DNA of 64,000 bases, taken from positions 310,001 through 374,000 of IMG/VR virus record IMGVR_UViG_3300036715_004471. One strand, written 5' to 3'. Positions 7,498-62,863 of the stretch are shown piece by piece. The notes below the pieces were generated by a model that saw only the letters and a program-made list of their open reading frames with translations, did not search any database and was not told the DNA's origin. A program made the translations under genes and the position numbers. How positions within the stretch are numbered: position 1 is the stretch's first letter; each line of letters begins with the position of its first letter.

Positions 7498-7932
7498 TCA
7501 CATAAATGCAATAAGTTTAGTAAGTCTATCTGCTAGAGCGATAGCTTGAAGATGCATATCATCGCCCGTTGACAACTGTACATATTTGATTTTTCTAATT
7601 TCTTTCCAAGTCGGCGGGATTCTCTTAGAAAATAAGCCTTCTGTTTCAAAATTTTCTATCAACTTAGTGCAAGTGAAATCATATCCACATTCACCTTCAA
7701 ATAAGATTCTTTTATTGCCTCTCATAATAATGAGACCATATTTTACACATTCCCACGGCTCAGGATCATTTGTAATAACTTGTACATATGGTCCATAATA
7801 TGGATCTTTAGCCGATCTAGCCGGACAATCTTTATAATTACTACAGTGTAAGTTCATTCTGAACTTGGTAGGAGAAATCTTATGAATTTCATCTCTATTG
7901 GTCATAAGACCTAAACATGCCGGACAATTCAT
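7498..7932 (-). CDS. Cys-rich hypothetical protein with C-terminal F-x motif
   Basis: Probable start MNCPACLG; ends RLTKLIAFM. Confidence 0.65.
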   Translation of the reverse strand: MNCPACLGLMTNRDEIHKISPTKFRMNLHCSNYKDCPARSAKDPYYGPYVQVITNDPEPWECVKYGLIIMRGNKRILFEGECGYDFTCTKLIENFETEGLFSKRIPPTWKEIRKIKYVQLSTGDDMHLQAIALADRLTKLIAFM

Positions 7933-8399
7933 TTGCTTTTTACCAAACTTTCCACATCTAATCCATATTCTGATAAATGAGAAAGATCTAACTTCCATTT
8001 TTTGTTAGATCTCTCCCGCCAAATCTTAAAAGAATCATCAATTAATTTAACCGCTTTGTCTTTACCCAAGCCATTTACACGCATAAAATGCTTCAAAGCC
8101 TTATCAAATCTGCCTTGAATTTGTGCCAAACCAATATGTTTTACCATATGACAGTTAGGGCACAGCGAAATCATGCCCTCTAACTTCTGAATTAAAGACT
8201 TATCATCATAAGTCCATATTTCATGGCATTCAACAGGATGATTGGGACCTACTTCTCCACAAATCTCACACATATAATATGCTTTTGAATAGACGGATGA
8301 CTTAATAGAGTTCCATTGTTTATCAGTAACAATAGCTCTAACGTTATTAAGCCAGGAACTTGAGGGAACCAATTCGATAGTTAAAATAACTTTTCTCAT
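7929..8399 (-). CDS. HNH endonuclease-like protein
   Basis: LTIELVP..W..NVR, CEICG, VECHEIW, LCPNCHMVKH. Confidence 0.8.
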   Translation of the reverse strand: MRKVILTIELVPSSSWLNNVRAIVTDKQWNSIKSSVYSKAYYMCEICGEVGPNHPVECHEIWTYDDKSLIQKLEGMISLCPNCHMVKHIGLAQIQGRFDKALKHFMRVNGLGKDKAVKLIDDSFKIWRERSNKKWKLDLSHLSEYGLDVESLVKSK

Positions 8400-8454
8400 G
8401 AAGCTATGATTAGTTATGCATACTATTGTAAGTTTAGTTTGATGGAGGCATTTA

Positions 8455-9198
8455 GTGTCAAAAAGAAAATGGACAAATCAAGATTTACTCGATGCGGTTA
8501 ATAGCTCTGAAAATATCACTGAAGTAATGAAAAAATTACGAATAAATCATTCTTCAAATAATGCAAATACTATAAAAAAATATATAGAAAATCTTAATTT
8601 AAGCTTAACTCATTGGAAAAATGAGTTAAAAACTACAAGGGCAGAATTTGAAACGCCAAATGAAAAAGTATTTTGTGAAAATAGTACTTTTACAAAATCC
8701 CATTTGAGAGAAAAAATAATAAAATATAATTTGATTGAATACAAATGTTCTATTTGTAATATGCTACCGGTGTGGAATGACCAAATATTAACTTTACAAG
8801 TAGATCACGTCAATGGTATTAATAATGACCACAGATTAGTTAATCTCAGATTTTTATGCCCTAATTGCCATTCACAAACTAATAATTATGCGGGAGCAAA
8901 TACTGTCAATAGAAAAAAACAAGATAAAAATAAATATATCTGCTCTAATTGTTTTAGTTACAAAAGCAAAGTTTCTAAATCTGGGCTGTGTAATAAATGT
9001 TTTTCATCAAAAGACAAATACCTTTGGCCAGAAAAAGATTTTTTTATCGAATCTCTTAAAACAAAAAGTCCATTTCAAATCGCTAAAGAACTTAAAGTAT
9101 CAGCAACATCTTTGTATAAAAGATTGAAAAAACTTAATATAAATTATGGTGGACACATCTTTAAGGAATCTGGAGATACGCCCTCACCTAAAGTATAA
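8455..9198 (+). CDS. HNH homing endonuclease
   Basis: CSIC...LTLQVDHVNGINNDHRLVNLRFLCPNCHSQT plus C-terminal HTH; antisense to neighbours. Confidence 0.9.
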   Translation: MSKRKWTNQDLLDAVNSSENITEVMKKLRINHSSNNANTIKKYIENLNLSLTHWKNELKTTRAEFETPNEKVFCENSTFTKSHLREKIIKYNLIEYKCSICNMLPVWNDQILTLQVDHVNGINNDHRLVNLRFLCPNCHSQTNNYAGANTVNRKKQDKNKYICSNCFSYKSKVSKSGLCNKCFSSKDKYLWPEKDFFIESLKTKSPFQIAKELKVSATSLYKRLKKLNINYGGHIFKESGDTPSPKV

Positions 9199-9350
9199 TC
9201 ACTGTGTCCAGTTGCAGAAATGCCGCATTTAATACATTTATAATGTACAGGACCATCATGACTATCATTTTCATAATCTATTGGTTCAAAATCATGAACA
9301 TCTAGATATTTTTGAAGACCTTTTAAACCAGGTTGTGTTGTTGTTTTCAT
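9144..9350 (-). CDS. hypothetical protein
   Basis: 68 aa with CxxC. Confidence 0.5.
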   Translation of the reverse strand: MKTTTQPGLKGLQKYLDVHDFEPIDYENDSHDGPVHYKCIKCGISATGHSDYTLGEGVSPDSLKMCPP

Positions 9351-9363
9351 AACTTACTCAAGT

Positions 9364-9540
9364 TTACTCAAGTTTACTCAGTTTGTAAATCAAAGAGTAC
9401 AACTCTTTCTGTAATTTTTCTACAGAAACAGGTGTTCCATCAGTATTTGCAATTTTTACTGTTCCGTACTTATGACGAGTTTCTAACTCATCCCTAATGA
9501 TTCTAATTCTACTTTGAATATCAGCTCTAGTTGTGATCAT
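9364..9540 (-). CDS. small hypothetical protein (58 aa, absent from ORF track)
   Basis: MITTRADIQSRIRIIRDELETRHKYGTVKIANTDGTPVSVEKLQKELYSLIYKLSKLE*; fills the gap between ORFs. Confidence 0.6.
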   Translation of the reverse strand: MITTRADIQSRIRIIRDELETRHKYGTVKIANTDGTPVSVEKLQKELYSLIYKLSKLE

Positions 9541-9553
9541 ACTGCATAATATA

Positions 9554-10785: not shown

Positions 10786-10811
10786 TTCAAACTTTCCATT
10801 CTTATTTTTAG

Positions 10812-10884
10812 CTCCCCTGGAGGGATTCGAACCCACGCAAAACCGTTTTAGAGGCGGCTGCTCTAACCACTGAGCTACAGGGGA
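10812..10884 (-). tRNA. amber suppressor tRNA (anticodon CUA)
   Basis: TCCCCTG TA GCTC AGTGGTTA GAGC A GCCGC CTCTAAA ACGGT TTTGC GTGGG TTCGAAT CCCTC CAGGGGA G. U33 precedes CTA (10849-10851); U1-A72, G73; followed by CTA, not CCA. Confidence 0.85.
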
Positions 10885-12489: not shown

Positions 12490-13227
12490 ATGACGGCTCA
12501 ACTAGTACCAACAGTAAAAACATCTTACTCTCCAGAGGAGTTAATCAAAAGCTTCATTGAAGGCTGGAAAAAACAATTTGGCACCATGCCAAATAAAAAA
12601 TCAATAGCCATATTGTGGGCTCAAAACAGAATTGAAACTGGAGCGACCTCGGCTATGTGGAATAATAATATAGGGAATGTTAAGTACGTTCCTAGTAATA
12701 ACCCAGAGAGTGATAATAATATTCAATACATGATGTTATCTAATGTCTGGGAAATCATCAACGGAAAAAAGGTTGTTTTCCAACCACCTCACAAAGCAAC
12801 TTGGTTTAGAGCATTTCCAACTTTAACAGACGGAGTTGCTTTTCATTTAGATTTCTTGAAAAATCATAGATACAAAAAAGCTTGGGCAGCCATCGAAGCT
12901 GGTAGTCCTTCCAACTTTGCGCATCTCTTAAAAGAAGCTGGTTATTACACTGCTCCAGAAGAAGATTATTCTAAAGCTATAGCTCTATTTTTTATGAGAT
13001 TTATAAGAGATGATACTTATGAAAAAGTATTAGCCTCTTTGGTAGCACCAAAACCAACTACTATTGTAAATCATGTTGAAACTATAACGGTAGAAACACC
13101 AATAGCACCACTGCCAGTGGAGCAACCAACGAGTGTTACTCCTATTCCGACAGCAGTGCCTCCACCAAATAAATCATTGTGGCAAACTATTATTCAATTT
13201 ATTTTGGGATTATTTAAAAGAAAATAA
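12490..13227 (+). CDS. putative endolysin (glucosaminidase/FlgJ-like lysozyme fold)
   Basis: AQ..IETG, NNNIGNVK, FRAF, LKEAGYYTA; Pro/Thr linker; C-terminal amphipathic helix SLWQTIIQFILGLFKRK; GGAGG RBS. Confidence 0.7.
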   Translation: MTAQLVPTVKTSYSPEELIKSFIEGWKKQFGTMPNKKSIAILWAQNRIETGATSAMWNNNIGNVKYVPSNNPESDNNIQYMMLSNVWEIINGKKVVFQPPHKATWFRAFPTLTDGVAFHLDFLKNHRYKKAWAAIEAGSPSNFAHLLKEAGYYTAPEEDYSKAIALFFMRFIRDDTYEKVLASLVAPKPTTIVNHVETITVETPIAPLPVEQPTSVTPIPTAVPPPNKSLWQTIIQFILGLFKRK

Positions 13228-13603
13228 TCAATCCTGAATGATTGTTAATGAAATCATCAAGAGATGAATAGCTTTCAATTATTCTATAATAAAGAGGTCC
13301 CAAAACTCCATTTGGGACCTTATTTCTTGGATTATGATAATATCTTCTTACGGAAAAAGAATTAAAAGATGGTTTGAATATTATTTTGAACCAGAAAAAA
13401 TCTTTTACGGTTTTAGCAAAAATAACTTCACATTGTTCTTTTGTTTTATTAGCATGCCCACAGGCAGCCTCAATACAATCATCAGAACAACTGAATGTAA
13501 CATCGTTAATTGACATATTACCAAAACGCTTTATTACTGAAGTATCTATTAACGATTTTATCAACTTTGAACATCGTATCGATTGATACAATTCCTTCAT
13601 CAA
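13214..13603 (-). CDS. hypothetical protein with C-terminal F-x motif
   Basis: Ends HSGLIIFF. Confidence 0.55.
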   Translation of the reverse strand: MMKELYQSIRCSKLIKSLIDTSVIKRFGNMSINDVTFSCSDDCIEAACGHANKTKEQCEVIFAKTVKDFFWFKIIFKPSFNSFSVRRYYHNPRNKVPNGVLGPLYYRIIESYSSLDDFINNHSGLIIFF

Positions 13604-13814
13604 AATTTTTCCACTCTACATGATACTTATTATTTGTTAATCGAATTAACCTTAGTGACCAGATTGATGAGGTTGTAGAGTTTCTTTTATAATGCAGTGC
13701 TCCATAATAAGACTTATCTGGAGCAGAACTTTTTTCTATTACAAAGTCTCTATTATCAACTGATAAATTCATCTTACCAGTAGAAAAAATTTCTATCGCT
13801 ACTTTAAGATCCAT
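13518..13814 (-). CDS. hypothetical protein with C-terminal F-x motif
   Basis: Likely start MDLKVAIE (track extension overlaps the tmRNA); ends RYFSNKAFW. Confidence 0.6.
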   Translation of the reverse strand: MDLKVAIEIFSTGKMNLSVDNRDFVIEKSSAPDKSYYGALHYKRNSTTSSIWSLRLIRLTNNKYHVEWKNFDEGIVSIDTMFKVDKIVNRYFSNKAFW

Positions 13815-13843
13815 TTTATACTGCTTTGCAAAATTATATACTT

Positions 13844-14197
13844 TGGTGGACCTGCGTGGTACCGCCCCACGGTCTTCCATAATCCAGATTAAAAATCGTT
13901 CACAAGTTTAGCCAATTTCAATGTAATTGACAACATCTTATTGAATTCGCTCAATAAAACTATCCCTGTTGATTTCACATTAACATCCGAGAACAAAGTT
14001 AACATTATCTTTTGTGGGTTGATATTCTCTTGACTACCAAAGATATCTTATCTAGAGAACATCCTTAAGCAGCTAGTGCTAGAGGAGCAGATGCATTATC
14101 GTTTGCAACTATACGTTAATCGTTAATTTAAGCCAATGACGATCATTTGGCACTTGCTTTTCAATGTTTCATACAGAATCGAATCTATTTCAAGCCC
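13844..14197 (-). ncRNA. ssrA: tmRNA
   Basis: 5' GGGCTTGAAATAGATTCGA pairs with 3' CAGGTCC-A-CCA (G3:U70 Ala identity). Resume context TAGTT-GCA; tag ORF ANDNASAPLALAA*; about 354 nt. Confidence 0.93.
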
Positions 14198-15501: not shown

Positions 15502-15577
15502 TGGAGCTAATTGTGGGAGTCGAACCCACCATCTATTTCGTACCAAGAAATTGTATTCCCACGCCTACTCAATTAGC
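15502..15577 (-). tRNA. tRNA-Thr(GGU)
   Basis: GCTAATT/AATTAGC acceptor, ATTTC-TTGGTAC-GAAAT, TTCGACT, CCA; atypical D-arm. Confidence 0.8.
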
Positions 15578-22947: not shown

Positions 22948-23976
22948 TTATGAGAATATTAGCAATTTCTTTAGTTTTTCTGGAAAAGATTTTTGATCAA
23001 TTTTGGCATGAGGAAACTTTTTGATGGTATCTATAATCTTGATATTGCAAGAAGAAGATAACTTAAATTGTAAATCTTTATCTTTGGATTTAAATGTAGG
23101 TTTGAAGTAATATATTTGAGGCGGATCATTTTTCGAATTCCAATAATTGTAAACATACAGTAGTTTGCAAGATTTAGGAACACAACCAATCTTAATCGTT
23201 TCTAATTTGCCATTCCATTCAAATGGAATGTCATATGATACTCTAAGTCTTAGTTCAGAACTATGATCCAGTATTTGAAAAGAATTGAATAGCTTATTAA
23301 CTGTTTTATCAGAAAACAGATACTCACCATTTGATGTATCAAGTTTCAATTGAAAATCTGGAAATTCTTTTTTAACTCTATTGAGTTTAGCTAGATTTCT
23401 GTCTAGCATTTCTATTTCTTCATCTCGATCTAATATTTTTGCCATATTTAACTCAACTTAAGTGAATACTAAAAGTTTCTTTAGTTTGGGATCCAAGTAT
23501 TTTGTATCTAACTCTGCGCCAGGTGATGTTTGAATATACTTCATTATTTCTGCCGATGCAGCTCGAAATAGTTCTTCTGAAAGATTTTGTTTCTTCATCT
23601 TAGATGAAAAGGCAGAAAACTTTATGCACTGTTTTTTTGTAGCATATGAGTATTTTTTTGTTGCTAATTTACGACTAGCAGGCACAGATAGAATCTTAAC
23701 AGTTTCAGTTCTTCCATTATGGGTAAATTCTAACTCATGGCAAACCTGAATTGATAAAGAATATTTATGATCAAATGTGTATTTGGTATAATTATCGTTA
23801 ACTGATGCAGATGAAAAGGTAATACAATCTCCATTAAATCCAAGACTTCTATTTACTTTTACATCTGGAAATTTAGATTTCACAAATTCAATTTTCGCGA
23901 TATTGAATTCTGCTTGTTTGATTTGATTGCTTAATTCATTCACAATTTGATTAATAGGCTTATTAATTCTGGGCAT
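22948..23976 (-). CDS. tandem paralog pair (22948-23445, 23458-23976) with C-terminal F-x motif
   Basis: Shared KFPD, VN, NG-ET-KI; end KLKKLLIFS and KLKKLLVFT. Confidence 0.7.
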
Positions 23977-33149: not shown

Positions 33150-33856
33150 TCAAAGAAATGCTTTACAGCTTTCTACTCGTTTGATAAACCTTTTAATATT
33201 TGTAATCAATTGTTCCGACAAATGATGTTTAGCAAACTCTTTCCATTTATCGGATTCGTTCATTACATCATCTTTATCGAAATAGAAATACTTCAAATAA
33301 GTTGTAAACTGATCACAACTTATGGCATAAAGTTTTTTATGGAAGAAAATTTCTATTTGATGATTGCTGGGAGGATTATCTAATTTCCCAGCAATCATAT
33401 CATTCATAATTTTCATAAGAACATTTTTTGTTCTAAAGCTCTTGAGACTTCATCCAAAGTCTCAAATGTAAATTCATTAATATGAAATCCTTCATGAGTA
33501 TAATGAAGGGTATTTTTGGATTGAAGGAATAGTTCTGTGAATCTTTTCTTAAGATGAAGATATTTGAAATGCTCATTCATCAACCCTTGAATCGAATCTA
33601 GATCTAATAGAGACCATTGACCGTTTTCTAATGCATTCCCAACAAAACTATAAAGAGCAACAGCATTATTTTTGCTTTTGTAATTATCGTAATGTGTTAA
33701 TAATCCGTATTCTTTTTCCACATCGATAACTACAGCTTTAAGTTCGCCACCCAAAAGTGTACTATCTTCATCATAAAATGACGTTTCCTTTGAGTAACTT
33801 TTTACATTCTTTGAAAAGCTTTTTAGATCGTAAACGGCTTTCTTTAATTTATCCAT
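33150..33856 (-). CDS. two hypothetical proteins (33150-33416, 33413-33856) with C-terminal F-x motif
   Basis: End RVESCKAFL and RALEQKMFL. Confidence 0.65.
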
Positions 33857-39548: not shown

Positions 39549-40253
39549 ATGAAAAATTTAGTAGCAATAAATGATAAATTCAATAATCTTACAGTAATTG
39601 ATTGTACAGAAGATTATCACGTTGAACCTTCAGGTAAAAAAAGAAGAAAAGTATTAGTAAAATGTGATTGTGGTGAAGAATTTAAAATTCAAACTCTTAT
39701 ATTAAAAAGAAAAGGACAAAAATGTTTTAAATGTAAGTTTAATACAGATAGTGCAGTTGTTATTGGTCAAACCTATACCAAACTTGAAGTTGTTGGATTT
39801 ACAATTCAAAAGAAAAAGAAAATGGCTTTATGTAAATGTATTTGTAATGCAATTATTTGTGCCCGTCCAGATCAGCTTGTAAATGGTATTACCAAGCATT
39901 GTGGATGTCAACATAAAGCAAATTGGAGAGGTATTGAGTTATTATCTCAATCTTTTATTGGAAGAATTATAAGAAACGCGCAAAAAAGAAAAATATTATT
40001 TAATGTTACCAATGAATATCTATGGCAACTTTATCAAAAACAAAATGGCAAATGCGCATTATCAGGATTAAATATCCCTTTTGGTAAATCTACCAAAGAT
40101 TCAAATGACGCATCATTAGATAGAATTGATAGTTCAGTTGGATATATTGAAGGAAATATTCAGTGGGTCCATAAAGATATCAATAAAATGAAAATGGAAT
40201 TAAAACAAAATAGATTTATTGAACTTTGTAAACTAATATCAAATAAAAACTAA
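39549..40253 (+). CDS. HNH-type homing endonuclease
   Basis: CDCG/HCGC; CALSG; ASLDRIDSSVGYIEGNIQWVHKDINKMK. Confidence 0.88.
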   Translation: MKNLVAINDKFNNLTVIDCTEDYHVEPSGKKRRKVLVKCDCGEEFKIQTLILKRKGQKCFKCKFNTDSAVVIGQTYTKLEVVGFTIQKKKKMALCKCICNAIICARPDQLVNGITKHCGCQHKANWRGIELLSQSFIGRIIRNAQKRKILFNVTNEYLWQLYQKQNGKCALSGLNIPFGKSTKDSNDASLDRIDSSVGYIEGNIQWVHKDINKMKMELKQNRFIELCKLISNKN

Positions 40254-40521
40254 CAAATGTCCAAATTCTTCTATTAATTTTTTCATTGTTTTAAAAATCA
40301 GGTTTTGGAATAAAGCCCGCCTCTAATGCAAAATATTGAAACCAATCATTTTGATATTGATCCCATTTAAAGCACAAATTACCATTTTCATCAAGACCCC
40401 AAATCCATGTTCCATCATTTTTGGGATTTGTTGAAGTTATCCTTATTTTTACATCTAGCTCATGAACTTTATTGTAAAAATAAGGATCAGAAAATTCTTT
40501 TATAATATTTTTATACTTCAA
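40239..40521 (-). pseudogene. hypothetical protein with +1 frameshift before a C-terminal F-x motif
   Basis: Frame 0 ends GAT TTT TAA. Removing one T of the T5 run (40293-40297) gives PDFKTMKKLIEEFGHLLVFI*. Confidence 0.55.
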
Positions 40522-40861: not shown

Positions 40862-42253
40862 TTAAATAAATGTAGATAGTTTCAATAATCTTTCGCAGTG
40901 ATTTTTAACAAATGCGGGGACTTTACAAGTATCTCCCCAATCTACAATGTTATTCGCAACTAAATAATATGATTTATTCTTTTTATCCCTATGAATACAG
41001 ATAAAAGTACGAACTGGTTCCAACTCAACTGCTTTATAAACAACAATAGTGTATTTGATCCCACTAATAGATTCTACTTCAAACCGATCGAGATCCGAAC
41101 GGTTGTTGATGACAAAATCCAGATATGCACGAATATCTTTTAGATATCTAATATCATCACTTGTCATATACACCCTTTTTCCTCCAAAGGTGAGCTTTTT
41201 CCAATTTAGAAGAGCTCATCTCTAGGATGCTTTGGTGTACTGTTTTGAAATCTTCAAAATCAAATTCAGCATCAAACTTAAAAGAGAAAATCTGTTTCTC
41301 TTTCATAAATACTTTCTTGATAACTACAAAAGTGGCGTTGGGATATTCAAACGCCATTTTAATTGCCGCCTTGATCGCATTTTCTCTTCTTCTAAAGAAA
41401 TTAAAATGATCCCCTTTGGGATTTCTAATAAAATATTCAGGAACAGCGATTGTTGTGTATAGTTTTTTCATACGACTTTAGGAAAATACAATGTATAGTT
41501 TAATGCGGGGACATTGTTTCAACACATCAGAATATTTAGTAATTACATCAAGAAAAGACATTTTCAAATTATGAGATAATGATTCAAATACCCTTTCAAC
41601 AATTTTGGGAGAATAATCTCTTATCAAAGTATGAAAAAAATCATTAGAAAACAAAGTTGCATCTTTATCCAAGAAATCTAAAAATTTACTTAAAGCAGAT
41701 AAAGAGAATTCGTAATTATCTATATTCACTAATAAATATCTACAAGTTCTAGTATGAATATGATTGAATTTGCTTTCAAAAGTTAAACTGATAAACAAAT
41801 CTAAATCATCAATATTTTCATGTGAAAGTTCGGGATCTGTTACAAATTGGGCTACAGCAACATAGTATTCGTCTATATTAGAAATAGAAAAGGCGCGAAG
41901 ATGTGTTTGATGCCTTTGATGAGTACTAGTTGGTTGAAACATTATTTTACACTTACAAAGCCAGAAGTTAAATCTTCTACTAATCTTTTTGCAAATTGCT
42001 TTTTGGTTCTGTATGAACCAAGAATATCAATCACGTTTTCTTGTAAAAAATCTACATGTTCTGAAGTTAATTGATCTGAAACATCTTTTGGTAAACCGCC
42101 ATAATCAGGATAATCAAAACTTCTATCCTTCATCATTTGACTTTTATTTTTCCAAAGTGCATCAACAAGCAACTCAAGCCATGGCACAATTTTTAATTTG
42201 ATTGACATAAACATCCTAGTTGGGAGAGATGGTACTGAAACCATTTCACCCAA
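40862..42253 (-). CDS. four hypothetical proteins (40862-41173, 41157-41471, 41478-41942, 41942-42253)
   Basis: Two carry the C-terminal motif (RLLKLSTFI, RIKLYIVFS). Confidence 0.6.
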
Positions 42254-49788: not shown

Positions 49789-49794
49789 ATAACA

Positions 49795-50423: not shown

Positions 50424-50885
50424 TTATAGTTTCTTATGTTTATAGTGTTTGAAATTATCGTAAAAATCATTACTTATCTTATTCCAAGGAGCAAAACAGA
50501 GTTGATATGGTCCTGCTTTTCTTCGAGCAATCTTGATAATTTCTGATCCAATTCCTTGTCGACGATAAAGGTAAGAGATGAATATCTCGAACAGGACGCC
50601 TTGATGGGACTTAAATCCACTCTGTGACCTTTTGAAATAATAATCACTAGACTCTCTGGACATTAAAGCCCAGCCTACTAATTCTTCACTTACATAAGCT
50701 AAAATAACTTTAGCTTTTACTTCACGAGTCTTGGCAATCTTTTCAAATGAATTCAATTCATGATTCATTCCTGAAAAATGATCTAATGTTAGTTTTCTTA
50801 GGTTTTTAAGAAGATCCTTATCATTTGCAATTTCATTAAAACTTTTGACACGAATAGTTAAATCTCTTTTCAAATCTACAGTCAT
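50424..50885 (-). CDS. GNAT-family acetyltransferase
   Basis: IFISYLYRRQGIGSEII acetyl-CoA motif. Confidence 0.75.
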   Translation of the reverse strand: MTVDLKRDLTIRVKSFNEIANDKDLLKNLRKLTLDHFSGMNHELNSFEKIAKTREVKAKVILAYVSEELVGWALMSRESSDYYFKRSQSGFKSHQGVLFEIFISYLYRRQGIGSEIIKIARRKAGPYQLCFAPWNKISNDFYDNFKHYKHKKL

Positions 50886-50910
50886 AATCTTAAATTGATA
50901 AATAATTATA

Positions 50911-50995
50911 TGGTGCCAATGAAGGGAGTCGAACCCTTATGCCCGAAGGCGCTGGAGTTTGAAGCCAGTGCGTCTGCCAGTTCCGCCACATTGGC
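50911..50995 (-). tRNA. tRNA-Leu(CAA)
   Basis: GCCAATG/CATTGGC, CTGGC-TTCAAAC-TCCAG, V-arm GCCTTCGGGC, ACCA. Confidence 0.88.
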
Positions 50996-51538: not shown

Positions 51539-52137
51539 TCACAAAAATGTTAACATGGTTTTTAGTTTGTTAGGAAATTGTTCTGGTGTAAATGAAAGTT
51601 CGTAATCAAATTTTGCAATTAATTGTGGCTGAATTGTTCTGTATAATCTTGTTTCACAATCATTTCGAATTACTAACATATAATTGCCATATGACATGAT
51701 CCATTCATCATATTCATTATTAAATAGTTGTTTATAATAACTGACCTTTACCGGTCTGTGCCTATTACAAACATTAAATTCCATTTTTCTAAAACAAAAT
51801 TTACATTTATCCATTACAAAAAAGTCAATATAGTTTTTAATTTGTTGGGGAATTCTTCTGGAGCAAATGGTAATTCATAATTGAATTTTTTGATGGACTG
51901 ATAATAATCAGAAGCTTTCTTAGCTTCTTTGTTTATCTTTTGGAGGGACGTTCCACCATAAAAATAACTCAAAACATATCCTCCATAAAATACTTTCCAT
52001 ACATCTCCAAATCTTAAATAAGATTTGTAAGTAACTTTTGATGGTTGATGGTTATTACATTTGACTATTTGGTAGTCGGTTCCACTAAAACGTTTTGTTT
52101 CAAATACCATTTCACGGTTACAAAACTTGCATTTCAT
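51539..52137 (-). CDS. tandem paralogs (51539-51814, 51814-52137): CxxC N-terminus, C-terminal F-x motif
   Basis: CKFC..M.F; F.YEL.F.PE.FPNKLKT[MI]LTFL. Confidence 0.75.
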
Positions 52138-53650: not shown

Positions 53651-54367
53651 TTATTGTTTATAGGTTTTGTTATTTACAATATAAAACATGATTGGTTGTG
53701 AAACGCCGTATTTCACGCCCAAATCTTTTTGGGAAATATTTCCAATAGCATATTCTTCTCTAATTTTAACTATTTGTTCATTGGTCAATTTTGCTTTAGG
53801 ATGTTTTTCGCCAACTAATTTTTTGTGAGCATCAGACATCCTTTTTTTAGTATTTTCTGATTTACATTTATTTATTTGACTATTTCTAATTTTTTCTTTT
53901 GTTTCATCAGAAACTGCATGACCAATTAATACACTACTTACTTTTTCTTTCCATTCTTCAGTATGAGGATTTAATTTGCCAATGTTACTTTCAGAAATCT
54001 TCTTTCTCGATTCTTCTGAATGATGTTTCCCATACATTGGCTGTTGCTCAGCAGGTAATCCAGTATTCCAAGCCGTTTCGCCACCAGGTGCCAGATTATA
54101 TCCTTTTTCCGGATTACGACTATCATACTGAATAATTAATTGCTTTTCTGTTTCATTAGCATCACTAGATGATTTACATTCTGCTATCACTTCAAATTGA
54201 AAATTCTTAATACCATATTTATTCATAGCTCGATGGATATATTGTTCTGGTTTCTTCTTGGATAACCATTTGTGATCTGACCATCGACGACCAGCATTTA
54301 TAGTTTGCCCAACATAAACCTTATCATTCAATAAATTGGTTATCTTATATAAGCATATTTTTCTCAT
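53651..54367 (-). CDS. GIY-YIG homing endonuclease with NUMOD3 repeats
   Basis: LYKITNLLNDKVYVGQT, GYNL, GKHHSEESRKKIS, C-terminal HTH. Confidence 0.9.
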   Translation of the reverse strand: MRKICLYKITNLLNDKVYVGQTINAGRRWSDHKWLSKKKPEQYIHRAMNKYGIKNFQFEVIAECKSSSDANETEKQLIIQYDSRNPEKGYNLAPGGETAWNTGLPAEQQPMYGKHHSEESRKKISESNIGKLNPHTEEWKEKVSSVLIGHAVSDETKEKIRNSQINKCKSENTKKRMSDAHKKLVGEKHPKAKLTNEQIVKIREEYAIGNISQKDLGVKYGVSQPIMFYIVNNKTYKQ

Positions 54368-54392: not shown

Positions 54393-54968
54393 TTAAGAAA
54401 AAAGCAGCATGGTTTTTATTTTATTGAGTGCAATGTTAGGATGAGAAAAATCTAATTTCACAATTGGAAAATCTGATGTATCATGTTCAGATACAAGTTC
54501 ATCGATTTTGTGTTTAGAAATTAGCATTTTGTCAGAATAATAAAGTAAAGTAATGCTATAATTATGTTTACCATCACTTAATATGGCATTGTCTTTATCT
54601 ATTCCGATATTATATATCTTACCAGAATGAACATCTAAAATGCATGAAGAGCTAACAGTAAAGGTAGTTAAACACTTTTCACAAACCGAAACTATCTGAA
54701 ATGATAATTCTGGTGATTTACCTTGAAAAGAAGTAGTAAAAGAATTGTTTATACCATCAATTTCATATTGAGCTTTATGATTTTTCAATTTAAGAGATGA
54801 TATAGTTATAATGACAGAAATCGAAACGATTTGTTCTTTTTTTGACCAATTTTCTATTACAACACCTGGCAAATCAGAGTTTATAGTTATAGCTCTGCAT
54901 ACATCTTGACATACAGGACAAAAAAGGCACTGTGCCCAAAGTTCTTGAAAGGTGTTGAATATTTTCAT
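54393..54968 (-). CDS. Zn-finger hypothetical protein, paralog of 11855-12439
   Basis: MKIFNTF..CPVC..CEKC; ends KIKTMLLFS. Confidence 0.65.
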   Translation of the reverse strand: MKIFNTFQELWAQCLFCPVCQDVCRAITINSDLPGVVIENWSKKEQIVSISVIITISSLKLKNHKAQYEIDGINNSFTTSFQGKSPELSFQIVSVCEKCLTTFTVSSSCILDVHSGKIYNIGIDKDNAILSDGKHNYSITLLYYSDKMLISKHKIDELVSEHDTSDFPIVKLDFSHPNIALNKIKTMLLFS

Positions 54969-57304: not shown

Positions 57305-58804
57305 TTATTTTACCTGAGTTTCAAATTCAATGATGTAACGTAAGCAATGTTGTTGTTCGGGTCCGGTTGGACTGTAAGTAATCAACTCATCGTTGTATAC
57401 TGCGCTTCCAGCTTTAGCGAAAACGGAATGATTAGGGGCAATGCTCTTTTTGGAATAAAAATGTGAGTTATTCACTATTTTTTGATTACCAAATGCCACG
57501 TCTCCTAAAAATAGGTAAGCAGTTTTATTACCACCTTGTGCCCAATATGAGCCTTTGACATCGCAGTAATTAATGGATTTGGTGCTATTGGTTGCCCAAT
57601 AAATACCGTCACCATACATAGATCCTGCATGTGCAACGCCTGATGGTCTAATCAAAAGACCTTTGGTAGTGATACCAATCATATTGGCGCGACGAGTTCC
57701 ATGCCAGCCAGGACATACATTGGCTGTTTTATATATTTCTTGCAATTCTTCTGGAACGTCTGGACGGGTTTTGATAAGCTTGGCGTAAACTTCTGAAGGA
57801 GTTTGTTTGCCACATTTCTTGGCAATTTCTTCTGCCACTGAAACAAATCTTTCTTCTTCGTCTTTACGATTAACTTTGAAAATCTTATGAGTTTTTAATT
57901 TACCTAAGAAAGAATGATTTCCAGCTCTGGTGCCATGTAACATGGCATCCAACCATTTCCAAGTTGGAGAATTAGGATCAATATATGCTAGATCGGCATT
58001 CAAAGTTGCATATTGCGAATCAACCGCACTCTTTTTAGACATAACGCTTTGAACATTCTTAGCATCATTGAAAACATCAAGAATATCAAATGCTTTATCT
58101 AATTTATCATCGGAATCCAAACGTAATACATCTGCATTAATTCTGGTATATCCAAAATTGTGTGGAATATTGGAATAATAAGAATTGGTCAATTTGTTCA
58201 ACTCATCTGTATCTGGTTTTTTAGCATGAACAATTTTGCGGGCTTCTTCTAAGATATCTTTGCCTTTACCAATTTGATCAACAGATAATTGACCTAAAGG
58301 ACATTTTTTGGTGTCTAGATTTAATTCAATGAATTCGGCAGTAACTCCGAACCAAGTTCTTACTAGGTCTTGAACTTCTGGATGAAGTTTAGAATCTTCT
58401 TTTACTTCTTCAACTTTAATCCCGACTTTTTGTAAATCAGAAACCGAAACTTTTGACACTTCGATTTTAGATTTACCAACTTCCGATCCTACATCTGCTT
58501 TAACCAACTTGACTTCAACATAACCTTTTTTGACTTTGGATTTGATAATCTTGTCGGATTCTGTTTCAGCATGTGATTGGCTATTGCAAATACGATATTC
58601 CTTTGCAATAGTTCCTCCAACTCTACCATAGTTGGTATAAATTCTAGCCTCTCCACTAGGAGCAATTTGAATTTCCAAATTATAGAACTTATTGGAATTG
58701 TTGACAATATCAGTAAAATTGAGAGTGGTTCTTCTAACCACATCAAAATTATTGGAAAACTTAGGTTCCGCGCCAGCGGAATAAGCAACTAATTTTTCAG
58801 CCAC
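57305..58804 (-). CDS. poly(ADP-ribose) polymerase-like protein (WGR, regulatory and catalytic domains)
   Basis: NSNKFY..YGRVG (WGR); PLGQLS..QI, YYSNIPHNFG (regulatory); WHGTR, MYGDGIYWA..KSINY, NDELITY (H-Y-E triad). Confidence 0.9.
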   Translation of the reverse strand: MAEKLVAYSAGAEPKFSNNFDVVRRTTLNFTDIVNNSNKFYNLEIQIAPSGEARIYTNYGRVGGTIAKEYRICNSQSHAETESDKIIKSKVKKGYVEVKLVKADVGSEVGKSKIEVSKVSVSDLQKVGIKVEEVKEDSKLHPEVQDLVRTWFGVTAEFIELNLDTKKCPLGQLSVDQIGKGKDILEEARKIVHAKKPDTDELNKLTNSYYSNIPHNFGYTRINADVLRLDSDDKLDKAFDILDVFNDAKNVQSVMSKKSAVDSQYATLNADLAYIDPNSPTWKWLDAMLHGTRAGNHSFLGKLKTHKIFKVNRKDEEERFVSVAEEIAKKCGKQTPSEVYAKLIKTRPDVPEELQEIYKTANVCPGWHGTRRANMIGITTKGLLIRPSGVAHAGSMYGDGIYWATNSTKSINYCDVKGSYWAQGGNKTAYLFLGDVAFGNQKIVNNSHFYSKKSIAPNHSVFAKAGSAVYNDELITYSPTGPEQQHCLRYIIEFETQVK

Positions 58805-58813: not shown

Positions 58814-60007
58814 TTATTGATCTTTTAATCTTTTTGCCAAGTCTTCTGCATATTGAGCTAACCAACTATTAGTGTAATCTACTTCTGATTCGTCTTCGGA
58901 TGCTCTAATTATTTCTTCTACTTTTCCGGCAGGTAAATGATCTCTCATTAATTCGTATAAGAAACTAGTTAAACGACCGTTCAATTTAATTTTTCCTGAA
59001 CGTTCGGCTAATCCTTTATTCTTTTCTCTATTTTTAACTACTTGTTTTTGTGACGACACGTAATCATCACATTGCTTCATCTTAACATCATTATAAATCA
59101 TGATATGATTTTAACTCTTTCTCGACAAATAATTTTAATAAGACCAATTTTCTGGATCATTTATATTGGGAGATGAATCTCCCAAATCATCTGCCAAAGA
59201 CGCATGAATTTCATCAATAACTTCATAATAAATATCTTTGATATCGTAGAAATCTTTGAGATGATCTGAAATCAACCCAAATCTTCTGGATGCCTCAGTA
59301 ATTGCCATTTCTTTAATCAAAAATTCATCAATCATGAGTCACAAGTCTTTCTAAAATTACATTAATGCAAAAACTAATAGTTCCACCAGCCAAAATCCAT
59401 AAAACGAATTGAATAGCTGACCAATCTTTATATGGAGCGGATAATAAATACACAATCCATCCAGCGTGACAGCCAGAACAGAAATAACATGAGAAGAGTT
59501 TATAAAAGAAAACTCCTACATATTTATTAATCATTAACTTATTACGAAGCCAACTAATGATTCCCCAAGGACCTTCTGTTTCTTTAACCAAGAAGGTCAA
59601 ACCAAAAATCGCCAAAATACTTAGCAATGTCATAAGAATGCCCCAAGTTTGTTGAGTTTGAATATGACATTCTCGAAATACTTCTTAACAGAATTTTTCT
59701 TTCGAGTTTTGATTTGCGGGACATTACTTACCAAATAAAAACAATTAGCGATGGGTAAGTCATCCCAGGAAACGGACCACATTGATTTGTATTCTGGTAC
59801 GAATTGCAATTTTCTTGAACAAAAATGCGGATACTGTACAGGACACGTACACCATGAATCTTTTTTGATTTTTTTCTTCTTTTTAGAAGAATCTCGCATT
59901 GTAATTTCAATAGGCTGATTATTTCTAATCTGCACAATATACTGACGAGAACCTATCACAGTTTCCAAATCCATTCCTTGGTAATATTCAATAATTGAGG
60001 TTTTCAT
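58814..60007 (-). CDS. four small ORFs (58814-59101, 59135-59335, 59328-59633 DUF1360-like membrane protein, 59630-60007)
   Basis: 59328 ORF has LFSCYFCSGCHAGW and TM helices; 59630 ORF ends KLNKLGAFL. Confidence 0.6.
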
Positions 60008-60836: not shown

Positions 60837-60837
60837 T

Positions 60838-61104
60838 TTACCAAAACACTTTCATTTTGATTAATCTCTCAAATTCTTCTTGAGAAGAACATTCAATTTT
60901 AGTGCCATGATACCACCACTCATGCTCTTCAATAATTTCATCATCAGCCGATAAACCAATCATATAAGATACAGCCGGACCAGTTAAACAATGAAACTTA
61001 TCATCATAAAGCCAAGCCTCTCCAGTGTTTGAGATGCGATGTTTAACTCTTGGATTATCTTTATCCATTGTGGTAATACCAAACATAATTGTCAAATCTG
61101 CCAT
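60838..61104 (-). CDS. hypothetical protein (H...GPA..EWWYHG repeat type) with C-terminal F-x motif
   Basis: FHCLTGPAV..EWWYHG..SSQEEFERLIKMKVFW. Confidence 0.7.
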   Translation of the reverse strand: MADLTIMFGITTMDKDNPRVKHRISNTGEAWLYDDKFHCLTGPAVSYMIGLSADDEIIEEHEWWYHGTKIECSSQEEFERLIKMKVFW

Positions 61105-61694
61105 AATTGATCTGAAAGTTTTTCTAAGTCTTCATAATAAACAGCCATCTTATTACCTTGAAGGATTTGCATCTTCATTGCCTTGAATAACTTTTTATCA
61201 TGTAACCATTGTACTTTGACCAAAGCTCTTAATTCTCCACAGCGACGAGGAACATTTAGCGAAACAAAACAGACATAATGACTTTCGTTATCTTTGCCGA
61301 AAATTCCTGTGTCGCAATCGAATTTGCCGCCATTACCATATTGAAAAACCCAAGATCTACCAAATGCAATTTCTGATTTGATTTCTTGAGATTTAACAGC
61401 TACTCTAAGTGGAACCTCAGGATCATTCAAATCAGGATCCCAATTTTTGTTTTTCTTATCGTAAATATTGAAATCAGGAGAAGAAATCTTTGGATAAGCT
61501 TCTACCAATTTTTGGTAAACTGCTTCTTCCGCCAATTTACCATTTCTAATATCTTCTGTAATTTTGACAACATTTATTTGTTTCCTACGTGCATATTTAT
61601 CAGCACTAGAACCAACTGAATCTTGCGCGAATTTGGTACACTTCTGCATCATCTCTTCTGAGATTGAGAAAGAAGGATCTTTAATAATTGACAT
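61092..61694 (-). CDS. hypothetical protein, possible PD-(D/E)XK nuclease
   Basis: GKLAEEAV...WDPDL...VAVKSQ; near Dam. Confidence 0.45.
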   Translation of the reverse strand: MSIIKDPSFSISEEMMQKCTKFAQDSVGSSADKYARRKQINVVKITEDIRNGKLAEEAVYQKLVEAYPKISSPDFNIYDKKNKNWDPDLNDPEVPLRVAVKSQEIKSEIAFGRSWVFQYGNGGKFDCDTGIFGKDNESHYVCFVSLNVPRRCGELRALVKVQWLHDKKLFKAMKMQILQGNKMAVYYEDLEKLSDQLWQI

Positions 61695-61706
61695 GTTCAA
61701 CTTTCA

Positions 61707-62513
61707 TTAAATGAAAATGTGTTCTTCGTTACGTAGTGAGCCGTAATATTTTGCTTTATTAACTTTACACTCTATGTTGCGTGAAACGTGAATCCAGCAA
61801 TCAGTATGAGTGTGTCCAGCTAATACAGTTACATTTCTCTTTTTACGATCCTGCATAACTTTTTCGATAGTCTTGCCAAGTCTGATGTTGACATTGTAAG
61901 GAAGCCAAAAATTCTCAAAAATTGTACCGACATGTCTTGTGGCTTCTTTCCATGGCGGTACATGAGTCAGAATGTAAATCGTCTTGTAATCCAGCGCAAG
62001 GGCTGTTTCTAATTTTTCTTCAATCTGCTCGCAAGATTTATCTGCCAAATGTTTGAAGGCTTCAATTCTAGCCTCCATAGTCGGTAAGTCTCTCAAATCT
62101 TTAATCAAAAACCAATCAGGGGTTATTTTAAGATAACTTGGTTTACCATTACTGGCATCATACCAACCTTCAGCGCCAATAACCGCGACTTCATCATTTA
62201 ACGGAACAACGCCCGATTCAGTCATCCAAATCAAATTTGGATGCTTATCACACAGGGCACGGATCTTTTTATGGGTTTCTTCAAATGAAGAGAAATGATA
62301 ATCATGATTGCCGAGGACAAAATATATAGGGCACTTAACTAAAGTTGCCAAAAGCTTCAAATCCAAACAAGTCATTAATCCGTTGGAAATATCTCCGGTC
62401 AGAAAAATGGCTTTTGGATTTTCTTTTTTGATACGATGGAAAAATCTTAATTTAGTAATAGGACCCACTTTATCCAAGTGGGTATCAGTGTACCATAGAT
62501 ATTTGTCCTTCAT
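61707..62513 (-). CDS. calcineurin-like metallophosphoesterase
   Basis: TDTHLD, TGDIS, LGNHDY, THVPP, AGHTH. Confidence 0.9.
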   Translation of the reverse strand: MKDKYLWYTDTHLDKVGPITKLRFFHRIKKENPKAIFLTGDISNGLMTCLDLKLLATLVKCPIYFVLGNHDYHFSSFEETHKKIRALCDKHPNLIWMTESGVVPLNDEVAVIGAEGWYDASNGKPSYLKITPDWFLIKDLRDLPTMEARIEAFKHLADKSCEQIEEKLETALALDYKTIYILTHVPPWKEATRHVGTIFENFWLPYNVNIRLGKTIEKVMQDRKKRNVTVLAGHTHTDCWIHVSRNIECKVNKAKYYGSLRNEEHIFI

Positions 62514-62533
62514 AAATCACCACCTAGTTAGTT

Positions 62534-62863
62534 TTATAAGAATGCTTTCATATGATAGATTCTATCAGCAAATGCAGCAGCTTCTGTCGGTTTAACAATT
62601 TCAAAACATATGAGAACTTCAATTCTGCCCATTAATACAGATGACTCTTCTTGCCTAACCCAGAGAACAGTAATGTCTTCTTTTGGATATAAAACCAAAG
62701 CTGCATACTTATTTTCAAACCTATAAGTAAGATTTTTCAATTCCCATTTAGAATAGTGTGGTGGTACTTGAGTTACAAAATATTCAACATTACACTCATC
62801 GCATCTAGACATGTACATGTTTATTCTATTTTCTGCATCACAAAACAGACATTTCCAACCCAT
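62534..62863 (-). CDS. Zn-ribbon hypothetical protein with C-terminal F-x motif
   Basis: CLFC..CDEC; ends RIYHMKAFL. Confidence 0.65.
   Translation of the reverse strand: MGWKCLFCDAENRINMYMSRCDECNVEYFVTQVPPHYSKWELKNLTYRFENKYAALVLYPKEDITVLWVRQEESSVLMGRIEVLICFEIVKPTEAAAFADRIYHMKAFL

What the first reader, a model, noticed from the sequence alone, without database searches (positions are those of the whole stretch)
7498..62863. About 17 unrelated small proteins share a register-fixed C-terminal tag [R/K]-h-x-x-h-x-x-F-x-COOH
Seen (last 9 aa): RLTKLIAFM (7498), RLSVLMTFQ (11855), NHSGLIIFF (13214), RYFSNKAFW (13518), KLKKLLIFS (22948), KLKKLLVFT (23458), RVESCKAFL (33150), RALEQKMFL (33413), RLLKLSTFI (40862), RIKLYIVFS (41478), KLKTMLTFL (51539), KLKTILTFL (51814), KIKTMLLFS (54393), KLNKLGAFL (59630), RLIKMKVFW (60838), RIYHMKAFL (62534), and EFGHLLVFI (40239, after frameshift correction). 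Phe is always at -2 and R/K is at -9 in 15 of 17. The recognisable enzymes lack the full motif, and the bodies of these proteins are mostly unrelated (several have N-terminal CxxC). There are two flavours: ..LL-x-F-x and ..K-[AMV]-F-[LW]. Inference: an amphipathic-helix docking signal binding one common partner, with variable N-terminal 'warheads'. Candidates are substrate adaptors/degrons for the phage ClpP/ClpR or MoxR-VWA machinery, a capsid-packaging/ejection signal, or a clamp-type binding tail (cf. the C-terminal LDFL motifs of T4 gp33/gp55).
Basis: partly seen in the sequence, partly recalled or inferred. Interest (0 to 1): 0.82.

Follow-up and report, generated by a model that had tools for sequence, protein, structure and literature searches.

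The report
Shared C-terminal helix tag, megaphage proteins
About one gene in six in this stretch of a giant uncultured phage genome encodes a small protein ending in the same short helix (…[K/R]-L-x-K-L-K-A-F-x-end); the feature is real and conserved and is shared by about 95 otherwise dissimilar protein families, but its binding partner and purpose are unknown.

Summary
In the window, 13 of 97 minus-strand ORFs end in the strict motif, against 0.14 expected from shuffled termini. Phe is penultimate in 19 of 97 (4.7 expected). Codon choice shows selection on the protein, not the DNA.

The window comes from a 446.5 kb IMG/VR megaphage contig assembled from a microbial mat. In related and other uncultured jumbo-phage contigs, 264 of 2250 non-redundant ORFs carry the tail. 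With the tail removed they fall into 95 BLAST families, and each family is all-or-none for the tail. Some 20 kb arrays reach 24 of 36 ORFs.

Orthologues conserve the tail better than the body. AlphaFold2 places it as a confident terminal alpha-helix on two beta-rich bodies, and an ESM model puts it on a HEAT-like helical body.

"Unrelated proteins" is only partly right. Many are tandem paralogues, and one flavour marks a widespread viral family of small MORN-like repeat proteins ending …SQEEFERLIKLKAFW.

Best reading: a variable binding scaffold plus a constant C-terminal helical handle for one shared, still unidentified partner. A purely structural capping helix is the main rival. The tail matches none of the clamp, ssrA, SspB or HbYX consensus patterns tested, and its helical amphipathicity is unremarkable, which argues against a MinD-type membrane anchor.

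The parts
7498..7932 (-). Tail-bearing gene, N-terminal CxxC; tail RLTKLIAFM (tail codons 7501-7527)
   Evidence: family 98: 3 of 4 orthologues keep the tail; start revised from orthologue L065
11855..12448 (-). Tail-bearing gene, two CxxC pairs; tail RLSVLMTFQ
   Evidence: (family 138, 3/3)
13214..13516 (-). Tail-bearing gene; tail NHSGLIIFF (no R/K at -9)
   Evidence: (family 194, 2/2)
13518..13880 (-). Tail-bearing gene; tail RYFSNKAFW
22948..23445 (-). Tail-bearing gene; tail KLKKLLIFS; paralogue of 23458
   Evidence: E = 7e-20 to 23458; family 61, 6/6
23458..23976 (-). Tail-bearing gene; tail KLKKLLVFT; paralogue of 22948
33150..33416 (-). Tail-bearing gene; tail RVESCKAFL
   Evidence: family 141, 2/2
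33413..33856 (-). Tail-bearing gene; tail RALEQKMFL
   Evidence: family 102, 3/3
40239..40521 (-). Frameshifted tail-bearing gene: body 40291-40521, tail piece 40239-40286 (EFGHLLVFI) in another frame
40862..41173 (-). Tail-bearing gene; tail RLLKLSTFI
   Evidence: family 101, 3/3
41478..41942 (-). Tail-bearing gene with a HEAT-like all-alpha body, syntenic just downstream of the DUF2201 metallopeptidase/VWA gene; tail RIKLYIVFS
   Evidence: (family 41, 8/8)
51539..51814 (-). Tail-bearing gene, N-terminal CxxC; tail KLKTMLTFL; paralogue of 51814
   Evidence: family 70, 5/5
51814..52137 (-). Tail-bearing gene, N-terminal CxxC; tail KLKTILTFL
54393..54968 (-). Tail-bearing gene, two CxxC pairs plus beta-meander; tail KIKTMLLFS forms helix 177-190 in the AlphaFold2 model
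   Evidence: (family 20, 14/15)
59630..60007 (-). Tail-bearing gene; tail KLNKLGAFL
   Evidence: family 164, 2/2
60838..61104 (-). Tail-bearing gene with a MORN-like beta-hairpin repeat body; tail …SSQEEFERLIKMKVFW forms helix 75-86 in the AlphaFold2 model
62534..62863 (-). Tail-bearing gene, N-terminal CxxC…CxxC; tail RIYHMKAFL
   Evidence: (family 181, 2/2)

Best explanation
The tails are a conserved, protein-level C-terminal alpha-helical module of about 12-16 residues. Its consensus is …[ST]-x-x-[EQ]-h-x-[KR]-h-x-[KN]-[LM]-[KL]-[AVST]-F-x-COOH.

The module marks a very large, fast-diversifying set of small accessory proteins (about 50-350 aa) in a group of uncultured aquatic jumbo and megaphages.

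Each protein is built as a variable N-terminal scaffold followed by the constant terminal helix. The scaffolds are of kinds that usually bind other molecules: MORN-like beta-hairpin repeats, zinc-ribbon plus beta-meander, and a HEAT-like alpha-solenoid.

Most likely the helix is a common handle. It sits as the last helix of the protein's own domain and presents an invariant surface (R/K at -9, L/M at -5, a small residue at -3, the penultimate Phe and the chain end) to one shared partner. The many paralogues would then act as interchangeable adaptors or cargo for a single hub.

The tail is conserved across phage contigs of 30-48% GC and has no homologues in bacterial genomes. I therefore infer that the hub is phage-encoded, or else a near-universal bacterial machine.

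Shown: reality of the motif, conservation, helicity, diversity of bodies, expansion in arrays. Inferred: that a shared partner exists. Unknown: its identity.
For: - Enrichment far beyond chance, with selection at the protein level.
- In related loci, families are all-or-none for the tail (16/16, 14/15, 13/13, 8/8 and so on).
- The last 9 residues are 62% identical among orthologues, against 40% for the bodies.
- Sequence information is concentrated at -9, -8, -5, -3 and -2.
- 264 tails in 2250 ORFs fall into 95 body families once the tail is trimmed. hhalign and iterative HMM searches join only a few of them.
- Three different predicted body folds all end in the tail helix.
- MORN repeat proteins fold without this tail elsewhere: the long homologues and the Atu_ph07 small ORFs lack it. 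The tail is therefore not required by that fold.
- The same tail sits on a non-MORN body in an unrelated jumbo-phage contig.
- No homologues were found in 185,579 bacterial and archaeal species genomes.
Against: - No partner was identified or tested. No co-folding tool was available.
- AlphaFold2 places the helix with high confidence (pLDDT about 93 in g54393), and the whole-chain pTM is 0.86. This is equally what a purely intramolecular capping helix would give.
- Tandem arrays show that much of the diversity arose by duplication, so shared ancestry of the module could explain the fixed register without any partner.
- In one lineage all the MORN-type tails have Leu instead of Phe at -2, so Phe is not absolutely required.
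Confidence: 0.45

Rival explanations
1. Purely structural capping helix. All carriers descend from one or a few ancestral small proteins by tandem duplication and extreme divergence. The C-terminal helix is kept because it closes the hydrophobic face of the small repeat or beta-sheet domain. The fixed register is simply inherited, and no common partner exists.
For: - Massive tandem arrays.
- Profile links between some families when the tails are included (20~27 at 95%, 27~70 at 64%), and between {80, 97, 340, 354} even without tails.
- Weak conservation reaches back to about -16, including an N-cap-like S/T-x-x-E.
- High AlphaFold2 confidence for the helix.
Against: - The same residues are conserved on beta-hairpin, zinc/beta-meander and all-alpha bodies. 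A helix that packed only on such different surfaces should co-vary with them.
- The tail is more conserved than the body.
- MORN bodies exist without it.
Confidence: 0.3
2. Capsid or prohead targeting signal. The tail would dock cargo to the scaffold or the inner capsid surface, so that a varied arsenal of small proteins is packaged and injected. It would be analogous to the T4 capsid-targeting sequence or to encapsulin and microcompartment targeting peptides. This is a specific sub-case of the 'shared hub' reading.
For: - The architecture (short terminal tag on unrelated small cargo) matches those systems, by established knowledge of T4 internal proteins, encapsulin cargo-loading peptides and microcompartment encapsulation peptides.
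- The carriers are confined to phages.
- The carriers are small accessory ORFans.
Against: - There is no virion data.
- The tag is not separated from the body by a flexible linker.
- Dozens to more than 50 different carriers per genome would be a very large cargo list.
- No sequence similarity to known targeting peptides.
Confidence: 0.1
3. Degron or adaptor tail for the phage-encoded Clp system (two ClpP genes at 327-1509 and the Clp/Hsp100-like AAA+ gene at 35674-36786). It would give timed destruction of early proteins, or delivery of bound host targets.
For: - ClpP x2 and an AAA+ protein with weak ClpB/Hsp104/ClpA similarity lie in the same window.
- The strict distance of Phe from the free end suggests recognition of the terminus.
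Against: - 0 of 264 tails match ssrA-like or SspB-XB patterns.
- The tail is predicted as an ordered helix, not a floppy end.
- Other contigs carry the tail (L075, L076) with no Clp gene in the stretch seen. This is a weak argument because the contigs are short.
Confidence: 0.08
4. Membrane-targeting C-terminal amphipathic helix of the MinD/FtsA type.
For: The tail is short, basic (net charge +1.8 over the last 11 residues) and hydrophobic, and it lies at the extreme C-terminus.
Against: - The hydrophobic moment at 100 degrees is unremarkable (0.31 against 0.27 for internal windows). Periodicity peaks at 120 degrees.
- Hydrophobic residues surround most of the helix.
- A membrane anchor does not need Phe exactly at -2.
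Confidence: 0.04
5. Sliding-clamp (beta, PCNA or gp45) binding tail, as suggested by comparison with T4 gp33 and gp55.
For: The tail has a C-terminal position and a hydrophobic pattern of period 3.
Against: - 0 of 264 tails match QL[SD]LF, QLxLx[LF], the PIP box or LDFL.
- There is no Gln enrichment.
- Dozens of small ORFan clamp clients per genome is implausible.
Confidence: 0.02
6. Chance, or a DNA-level signal (promoter, ribosome-binding site or terminator) that happens to be translated.
For: None found.
Against: - Shuffle statistics.
- Synonymous codon variation and variable spacing to the next gene.
- Conservation in orthologues at 25-40% body identity.
Confidence: 0.01

Closest known systems
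T4 capsid-targeting sequence (CTS) on the internal proteins of T-even phages
   Same: A short, register-fixed terminal tag is shared by otherwise unrelated, fast-evolving small phage proteins encoded in hypervariable regions. The tag gives all of them one common destination.
   Different: The CTS is N-terminal, is removed by the prohead protease, and has an unrelated sequence. Here the tag is C-terminal and helical, no cleavage site is evident, and packaging is untested.
Encapsulin cargo-loading peptides and bacterial microcompartment encapsulation peptides
   Same: A terminal peptide of about 10-18 residues on unrelated cargo docks to one shell protein. In microcompartments it is an amphipathic helix and in encapsulins it is often C-terminal.
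   Different: Those tags are joined to the cargo by flexible linkers and have other consensus sequences. No shell genes were seen here. This tail runs straight on from the folded body and is not cleanly amphipathic.
F-box, SOCS-box and poxvirus PRANC adaptor proteins
   Same: A variable repeat scaffold that binds targets (ANK, WD40, LRR; here MORN-like, HEAT-like and zinc-ribbon) is joined to a small constant helical module at the C-terminal end. That module plugs into one hub. These families expand in tandem in large viruses.
   Different: Those boxes are 40-50 residues long, belong to the eukaryotic ubiquitin system and have no sequence similarity to this tail. The analogy is one of architecture only.
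MORN repeat variant proteins (Pfam MORN_2 PF07661; DUF6745) of phages and giant viruses
   Same: Gene 60838 and its thousands of relatives carry the repeated LHRxDGPA…WYxNG hairpin motif. The ESM Atlas groups them with 'MORN repeat variant' and DUF6745 viral clusters.
   Different: Pfam scores are below threshold. The terminal …SQEEFERLIKLKAFW helix is not part of those models. It is absent from long MORN proteins and from the Atu_ph07 homologues.
HbYX motif of proteasome activators, and HslU C-terminal tails
   Same: A hydrophobic-aromatic-any tripeptide at the exact C-terminus. 228 of 264 tails fit Hb-F-x.
   Different: The defining Tyr is never present (0 of 264). HbYX tails are flexible and belong to AAA+ ring proteins. 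No 20S proteasome or HslV gene was seen in the parts examined.
Lineage-specific expansion of about 35 small zinc-ribbon proteins in Bacillus phage G (Iyer et al. 2021, PMC7824862)
   Same: A jumbo phage with a large expansion of small zinc-ribbon ORFans of unknown role.
   Different: No shared C-terminal tail is described there. The expansion here spans many body types unified only by the tail.

Membership tests
MORN_2 (PF07661) / DUF6745 (PF20530) | Score above the Pfam gathering threshold | tested here: not met
   Gene 60838 has no Pfam hit at E <= 0.1. 25 of 46 relatives hit DUF6745, but the eight scanned individually scored at most 23.4 bits against the 27-bit cut-off, and only on profile positions 60-101 of 206.
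MORN-like repeat proteins (fold level) | Repeated beta-hairpin units with a G-x-W/Y signature forming an antiparallel sheet | tested here: met
   Alignment A3 shows repeated LHRxDGPA…WYxxG units. The AlphaFold2 model is a string of beta-strands. The ESM Atlas structural neighbours are 'MORN repeat variant' clusters at TM 0.56-0.68. This applies to gene 60838 only, not to the other carriers.
Bacterial beta-clamp / PCNA / T4 gp45 binding tails | QL[SD]LF or QLxLx[LF]; PIP box Q-x-x-h-x-x-a-a; LDFL-type tail | tested here: not met
   0 of 264 tails match any of these. No Gln enrichment in the tail logo.
HbYX proteasome-activator motif | Hydrophobic-Tyr-any at the free C-terminus | tested here: not met
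   0 of 264 have Tyr at -2; 228 of 264 fit Hb-F-x.
HbYX proteasome-activator motif | A 20S proteasome or HslV-type partner is present | not tested
   No such gene was seen in the window or fetched loci, but the whole genome and the host were not available.
ClpX degrons and SspB-type ClpX-binding tails | C-terminal LAA-like degron, or an L-[RK]-V-V-K tail | tested here: not met
   0 of 264.
ClpX degrons and SspB-type ClpX-binding tails | Tail-dependent binding or degradation by Clp machinery | not testable with these tools
   No co-folding or experiment was possible. ClpP x2 and a Clp/Hsp100-like AAA+ gene are present.
MinD/FtsA-type membrane-targeting helix | High helical (100 degree) hydrophobic moment with a basic flank | tested here: not met
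   The hydrophobic moment at 100 degrees is 0.31 against 0.27 for internal windows, with 36% of internal windows as high. The peak is at 120 degrees.
T4 capsid-targeting sequence | N-terminal leader removed by the prohead protease | tested here: not met
   The tag here is at the C-terminus. The analogy is one of architecture only.
Encapsulin / microcompartment targeting peptides | Terminal peptide on a flexible linker, with shell genes in the genome | tested here: inconclusive
   The tail runs straight on from the folded body in both AlphaFold2 models. A profile of the tail finds nothing in the PDB sequences. Shell genes could not be searched genome-wide.

The most novel reading that the evidence does not exclude
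The tail is an address label of a previously unrecognised phage-encoded sorting or docking system. One hub would recognise the terminal helix (R/K at -9, L at -5, F at -2, chain end) and so recruit, package or process about 100 different small effector proteins per megaphage genome. Candidate hubs are the prohead interior, a Clp-type machine or the MoxR/VWA pair. The variable MORN-like, HEAT-like and zinc-ribbon bodies would each bind a different host target. This would be a phage counterpart of the F-box/PRANC or cargo-loading-peptide logic.
Probability: 0.3. Interest if true: 0.85.

Novelty: new variant of a known kind. Interest (0 to 1): 0.66.

Why it matters
Most genes of jumbo and megaphages are small ORFans with no handle for study.

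A single 9-12 residue C-terminal signature groups about 12% of the ORFs in the sampled loci, and up to two thirds of the ORFs in some arrays. That gives a simple way to annotate them.

It also gives an experimental entry point: fish with the tail to find the hub, then use the variable bodies to find the host targets.

If a shared partner exists, this would be a new virus-encoded docking or sorting system. If not, it is still a striking case of hyper-diversifying paralogues that keep only a terminal helix.

Tried and rejected
- Pfam and PHROGs scans of the 16 window proteins and 14 relatives gave no family.
- megablast and tblastn against cultured phages found no relatives of the tail-bearing proteins. 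Only the MORN bodies matched, in Atu_ph07, PA5oct-like phages and Celeribacter phage, and those lack the tail.
- The word-indexed protein search returned only 3-4 close relatives per query.
- Foldseek of both AlphaFold2 models against the PDB gave no significant fold match. BFVD returned only uncultured-phage ORFans.
- A profile of the tail against PDB sequences found nothing meaningful.
- The genome-contig scan found no bacterial or archaeal homologue.
- I looked for an untagged gene family that recurs beside the arrays, as a possible partner. None was convincing; component 40 occurs in only 3 loci.
- I tested for lineage-wide co-variation of the tail, which would be a partner co-evolution signal. 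The Leu-for-Phe change is confined to the MORN family of one lineage, while other families in the same contig keep Phe, so this is uninformative.
- Literature searches for the motif strings, MORN plus jumbo phage, and megaphage paralogue motifs found nothing relevant.
- No RNA run was listed for the region.
- TAG read-through was checked and no in-frame TAG was found in minus-strand genes of the window.
- The DNA-level explanation was rejected.

Full report
**What the window is**

The window is 33% GC, and almost all of its genes lie on the minus strand. It is identical to part of IMGVR_UViG_3300036715_004471, a 446,541 bp viral contig. The best-matching DNA run is labelled microbial mat metagenome, and near relatives occur in lake, sediment, aquatic and wastewater metagenomes.

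Recognisable genes include:
- two ClpP genes;
- a DUF2201 metallopeptidase/VWA protein;
- an AAA+ protein with weak Clp/Hsp100 similarity;
- a WGR-PARP protein;
- TyrRS;
- RNA ligase, two PNKP-like proteins and an RlaP nucleotidyltransferase;
- the OB/HhH/BRCT part of an NAD-dependent DNA ligase;
- a Dam-type (D12-class) DNA methyltransferase, plus a separate SAM-dependent methyltransferase-domain protein, a glycosyltransferase and a DegT aminotransferase;
- two IscA-like proteins, inferred from their CGCGxSF C-terminal ends only and not scanned;
- 11 tRNAs.

**Checking the observation**

All 17 quoted tails are present at the stated stop codons. I worked with 97 minus-strand ORFs of at least 50 aa.
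- Phe is penultimate in 19, against 4.7 expected (p = 1.7e-7). It is the only strongly enriched residue/position pair within the last 15 positions. R at -9, L at -5 and L at -8 come next.
- The strict motif [RK]-h-x-x-h-x-x-F-x occurs at 13 C-termini, against only 8 internal places in 17,212 positions.
- Shuffling the last 30 residues 5000 times gives a mean of 0.14 and never more than 3.
- Only two paralogue pairs are detectable by BLAST. Collapsing them leaves 11 of 95.

The signal is in the protein, not the DNA. The Phe codon is TTT in 10 tails and TTC in 6. Positions -5 and -9 use many synonymous codons. The distance from the stop codon to the next start ranges from -4 to more than 1000 nt.

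The 'frameshift-corrected' case at 40239 is genuine.
- Orthologues of gene 40291-40521 end in …KEFGHLLVFI, …VWL or …VWI.
- The frameshifted sequence appears without indels in contigs of two runs.
- A co-occurring allele reads in frame, …PISEMRKIVKEFGHLLVFI.

**Conservation in relatives**

I fetched 74 loci around four anchor genes from related 350-480 kb contigs.
- 177 of 1624 non-redundant ORFs have Phe at -2.
- The tail is a family-level trait. Families either carry it in essentially every orthologue (16/16, 14/15, 13/13, 8/8, 6/6, 5/5 and so on) or never carry it.
- Among orthologues, the last nine residues average 62% identity and the bodies 40%.
- With one representative per family, sequence information is concentrated at five positions: -9 (R/K in 40 of 56), -8 (hydrophobic), -5 (L/M/Y), -3 (A/V/I) and -2 (F). 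Weaker helix-like conservation reaches back to about -16.

**Are the carriers unrelated?**

Partly.
- With the tails trimmed, hhalign and iterative HMM searches join only a few families: {80, 97, 340, 354, 167}, {20, 271}, {27, 413} and {70, 201}. With the tails included, 20~27 (95%) and 27~70 (64%) also join.
- None of the carriers has a Pfam or PHROG annotation.
- Gene 60838 is different. It is a MORN-like repeat protein. An exhaustive profile search found 5822 relatives. Almost every small relative (77-250 aa) ends in …C-S-S-Q-E-E-F-E-R-L-I-K-L-K-A-F-W at its exact C-terminus, with F at -2 in 39 of 55 and L in 12. Long MORN proteins do not end this way.
- So the K-[AV]-F-[LW] flavour marks a widespread, purely viral family. 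No homologue was found in 185,579 bacterial and archaeal species genomes.

**Scale**

Loci fetched with that family show arrays in which a large share of the ORFs end in the tail: 24 of 36, 19 of 49, 16 of 52, 14 of 36 and 13 of 39.

Pooling everything gives 2250 non-redundant ORFs. Of these, 354 have F at -2 and 264 carry a strict tail. After removal of the last 12 residues they fall into 95 BLAST components, which are again all-or-none for the tail.

One 448 kb relative has at least 58 ORFs with Phe at -2 in the 100 kb sampled.

An unrelated contig encoding TubZ, UvsW, DnaB and RNR has three adjacent carriers, one of them with a non-MORN body.

As a control, a 12 kb region of the cultured 490 kb phage Atu_ph07 holds MORN-like small ORFs, and 0 of 23 carry the tail.

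**Structure**

- Gene 60838, AlphaFold2 with 46 sequences: pLDDT 86, beta-strands followed by helix 75-86.
- Gene 54393, AlphaFold2 with 19 sequences: pLDDT 92.5 and pTM 0.86. It has two CxxC pairs, a 13-strand beta-meander and a terminal helix 177-190 at pLDDT about 93.
- Neither model has a significant PDB neighbour.
- Gene 41478: the ESM Atlas model is a HEAT-like alpha-solenoid, TM 0.55-0.58.

So the tail is a helix in both flavours, and it sits on at least three body types. These are scaffolds of kinds that usually bind other molecules.

The hydrophobic moment of the last 11 residues is unremarkable at 100 degrees (0.31 against 0.27 for internal windows). It is high at 120 degrees (0.49 against 0.27), reflecting hydrophobic residues at -11, -8, -5 and -2. 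The helix is hydrophobic around most of its circumference, so it is not a clean membrane-type amphipathic helix.

**Mechanism**

I could not test any partner, so the mechanism is an inference. Four points favour a common handle:
- the same residues are kept on very different bodies;
- the tail is better conserved than the bodies;
- MORN bodies exist without it;
- the carriers have the look of diversifying binders.

Two points favour a purely structural, inherited capping helix:
- the tandem-duplication origin of much of the diversity;
- the high AlphaFold2 confidence for the helix.

I rate the handle reading at 0.45 and the capping-helix reading at 0.30.

On specific hubs:
- None of 264 tails matches a clamp, PIP, LDFL, ssrA, SspB-XB or HbYX consensus, although 228 of 264 fit hydrophobic-Phe-any.
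- An ordered helix argues against a floppy degron.
- Capsid packaging, the Clp system and the MoxR/VWA pair remain open. Family 41 lies directly downstream of the VWA gene in eight relatives.
- The tail is conserved across contigs of 30-48% GC. This suggests a phage-encoded hub or a near-universal bacterial one.

**Novelty**

I found no description of this tail in Pfam, PHROGs, the PDB sequences or the searchable literature.

The nearest concepts are the T4 capsid-targeting sequence, encapsulin and microcompartment targeting peptides, and the F-box/PRANC architecture. The nearest described phenomenon is the expansion of about 35 zinc-ribbon proteins in Bacillus phage G (PMC7824862).

Noticed in passing
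window 10811-10884 (-): ARAGORN labels this a tRNA-Pyl with anticodon CTA, which would make it an amber suppressor. TAG ends only 2 of 97 ORFs, yet no minus-strand gene in the window has an in-frame TAG, so recoding is not evident here.
   Followed up: partly
window 39549-40253 (+) and 53651-54367 (-): Two homing-endonuclease-type genes. The first is HNH-like by its motifs, lies on the opposite strand and abuts the frameshifted tail-bearing gene. The second is GIY-YIG plus NUMOD3. Assembly graphs of two runs branch at 40241-40270, where a second allele with an intact gene co-occurs.
   Followed up: partly
window 57305-58804 (-); L076 1229-2083: A full WGR / PARP-regulatory / PARP-catalytic protein in a phage. 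In another contig a PARG-like gene sits next to two MORN-tail genes.
   Followed up: no
window 28302-29525, 32201-33136, 34406-35338, 38403-39503 (-): An RNA-repair set: a T4-type RNA ligase, two kinase-phosphatase (PNKP-like) proteins and an RlaP nucleotidyltransferase. It is interleaved with tail-bearing genes 33150 and 33413.
   Followed up: no
window 327-953 and 925-1509 (-); 35674-36786 (-): Two adjacent ClpP paralogues, and a 370 aa AAA+ protein whose closest solved relatives are ClpB/Hsp104/ClpA modules at E about 3e-6. Together they may form a phage Clp machine.
   Followed up: partly
window 47716-50995 (-) and 7416-7490, 15502-15577: A tRNA-rich region: 8 tRNAs within 3.3 kb, including three Leu, three Glu and two Arg, plus scattered others.
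   Followed up: no
window 37069-37419 and 40526-40849 (-): Two proteins ending …CGCG[TS]SF[SN]V, which look like IscA/HesB proteins by that end only (not scanned). Relatives keep one or two such genes next to the tail-bearing genes.
   Followed up: no
L088 1-17261; L094; L095: Very long tandem arrays of MORN-tail genes (17, 9 and 9 in a row). At least L088 and L094 lie on one 91 kb contig, 3300048502_000185.
   Followed up: partly
L079, L083, L084: In one lineage every MORN-type tail ends KLK-x-L-W, with Leu instead of Phe at -2. Non-MORN carriers in L084 keep Phe.
   Followed up: partly
L090 9327-9857; L102 10420-11725: A MORN subfamily in which five extra residues are inserted between SQEEFE and the end (…SQEEFENSKEYREWKLKAFK). 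R at -9 and KLKAF are kept, so the terminal part is conserved independently of its distance from the body.
   Followed up: no
L003 5415-12077; L020 12116-18659; L015 12268-19304: Relatives carry a conserved five-gene block downstream of the VWA gene (about 155, 700, 310, 380 and 346 aa). Its last member (family 19, helix-rich, 346 aa) ends in the tail …AFPELKKLAAFV. The block is absent from the window.
   Followed up: no
window 62865-63974 (-): Only the OB, HhH and BRCT parts of an NAD-dependent DNA ligase are encoded in this ORF. The adenylation domain must lie in a separate ORF or beyond the window edge.
   Followed up: no
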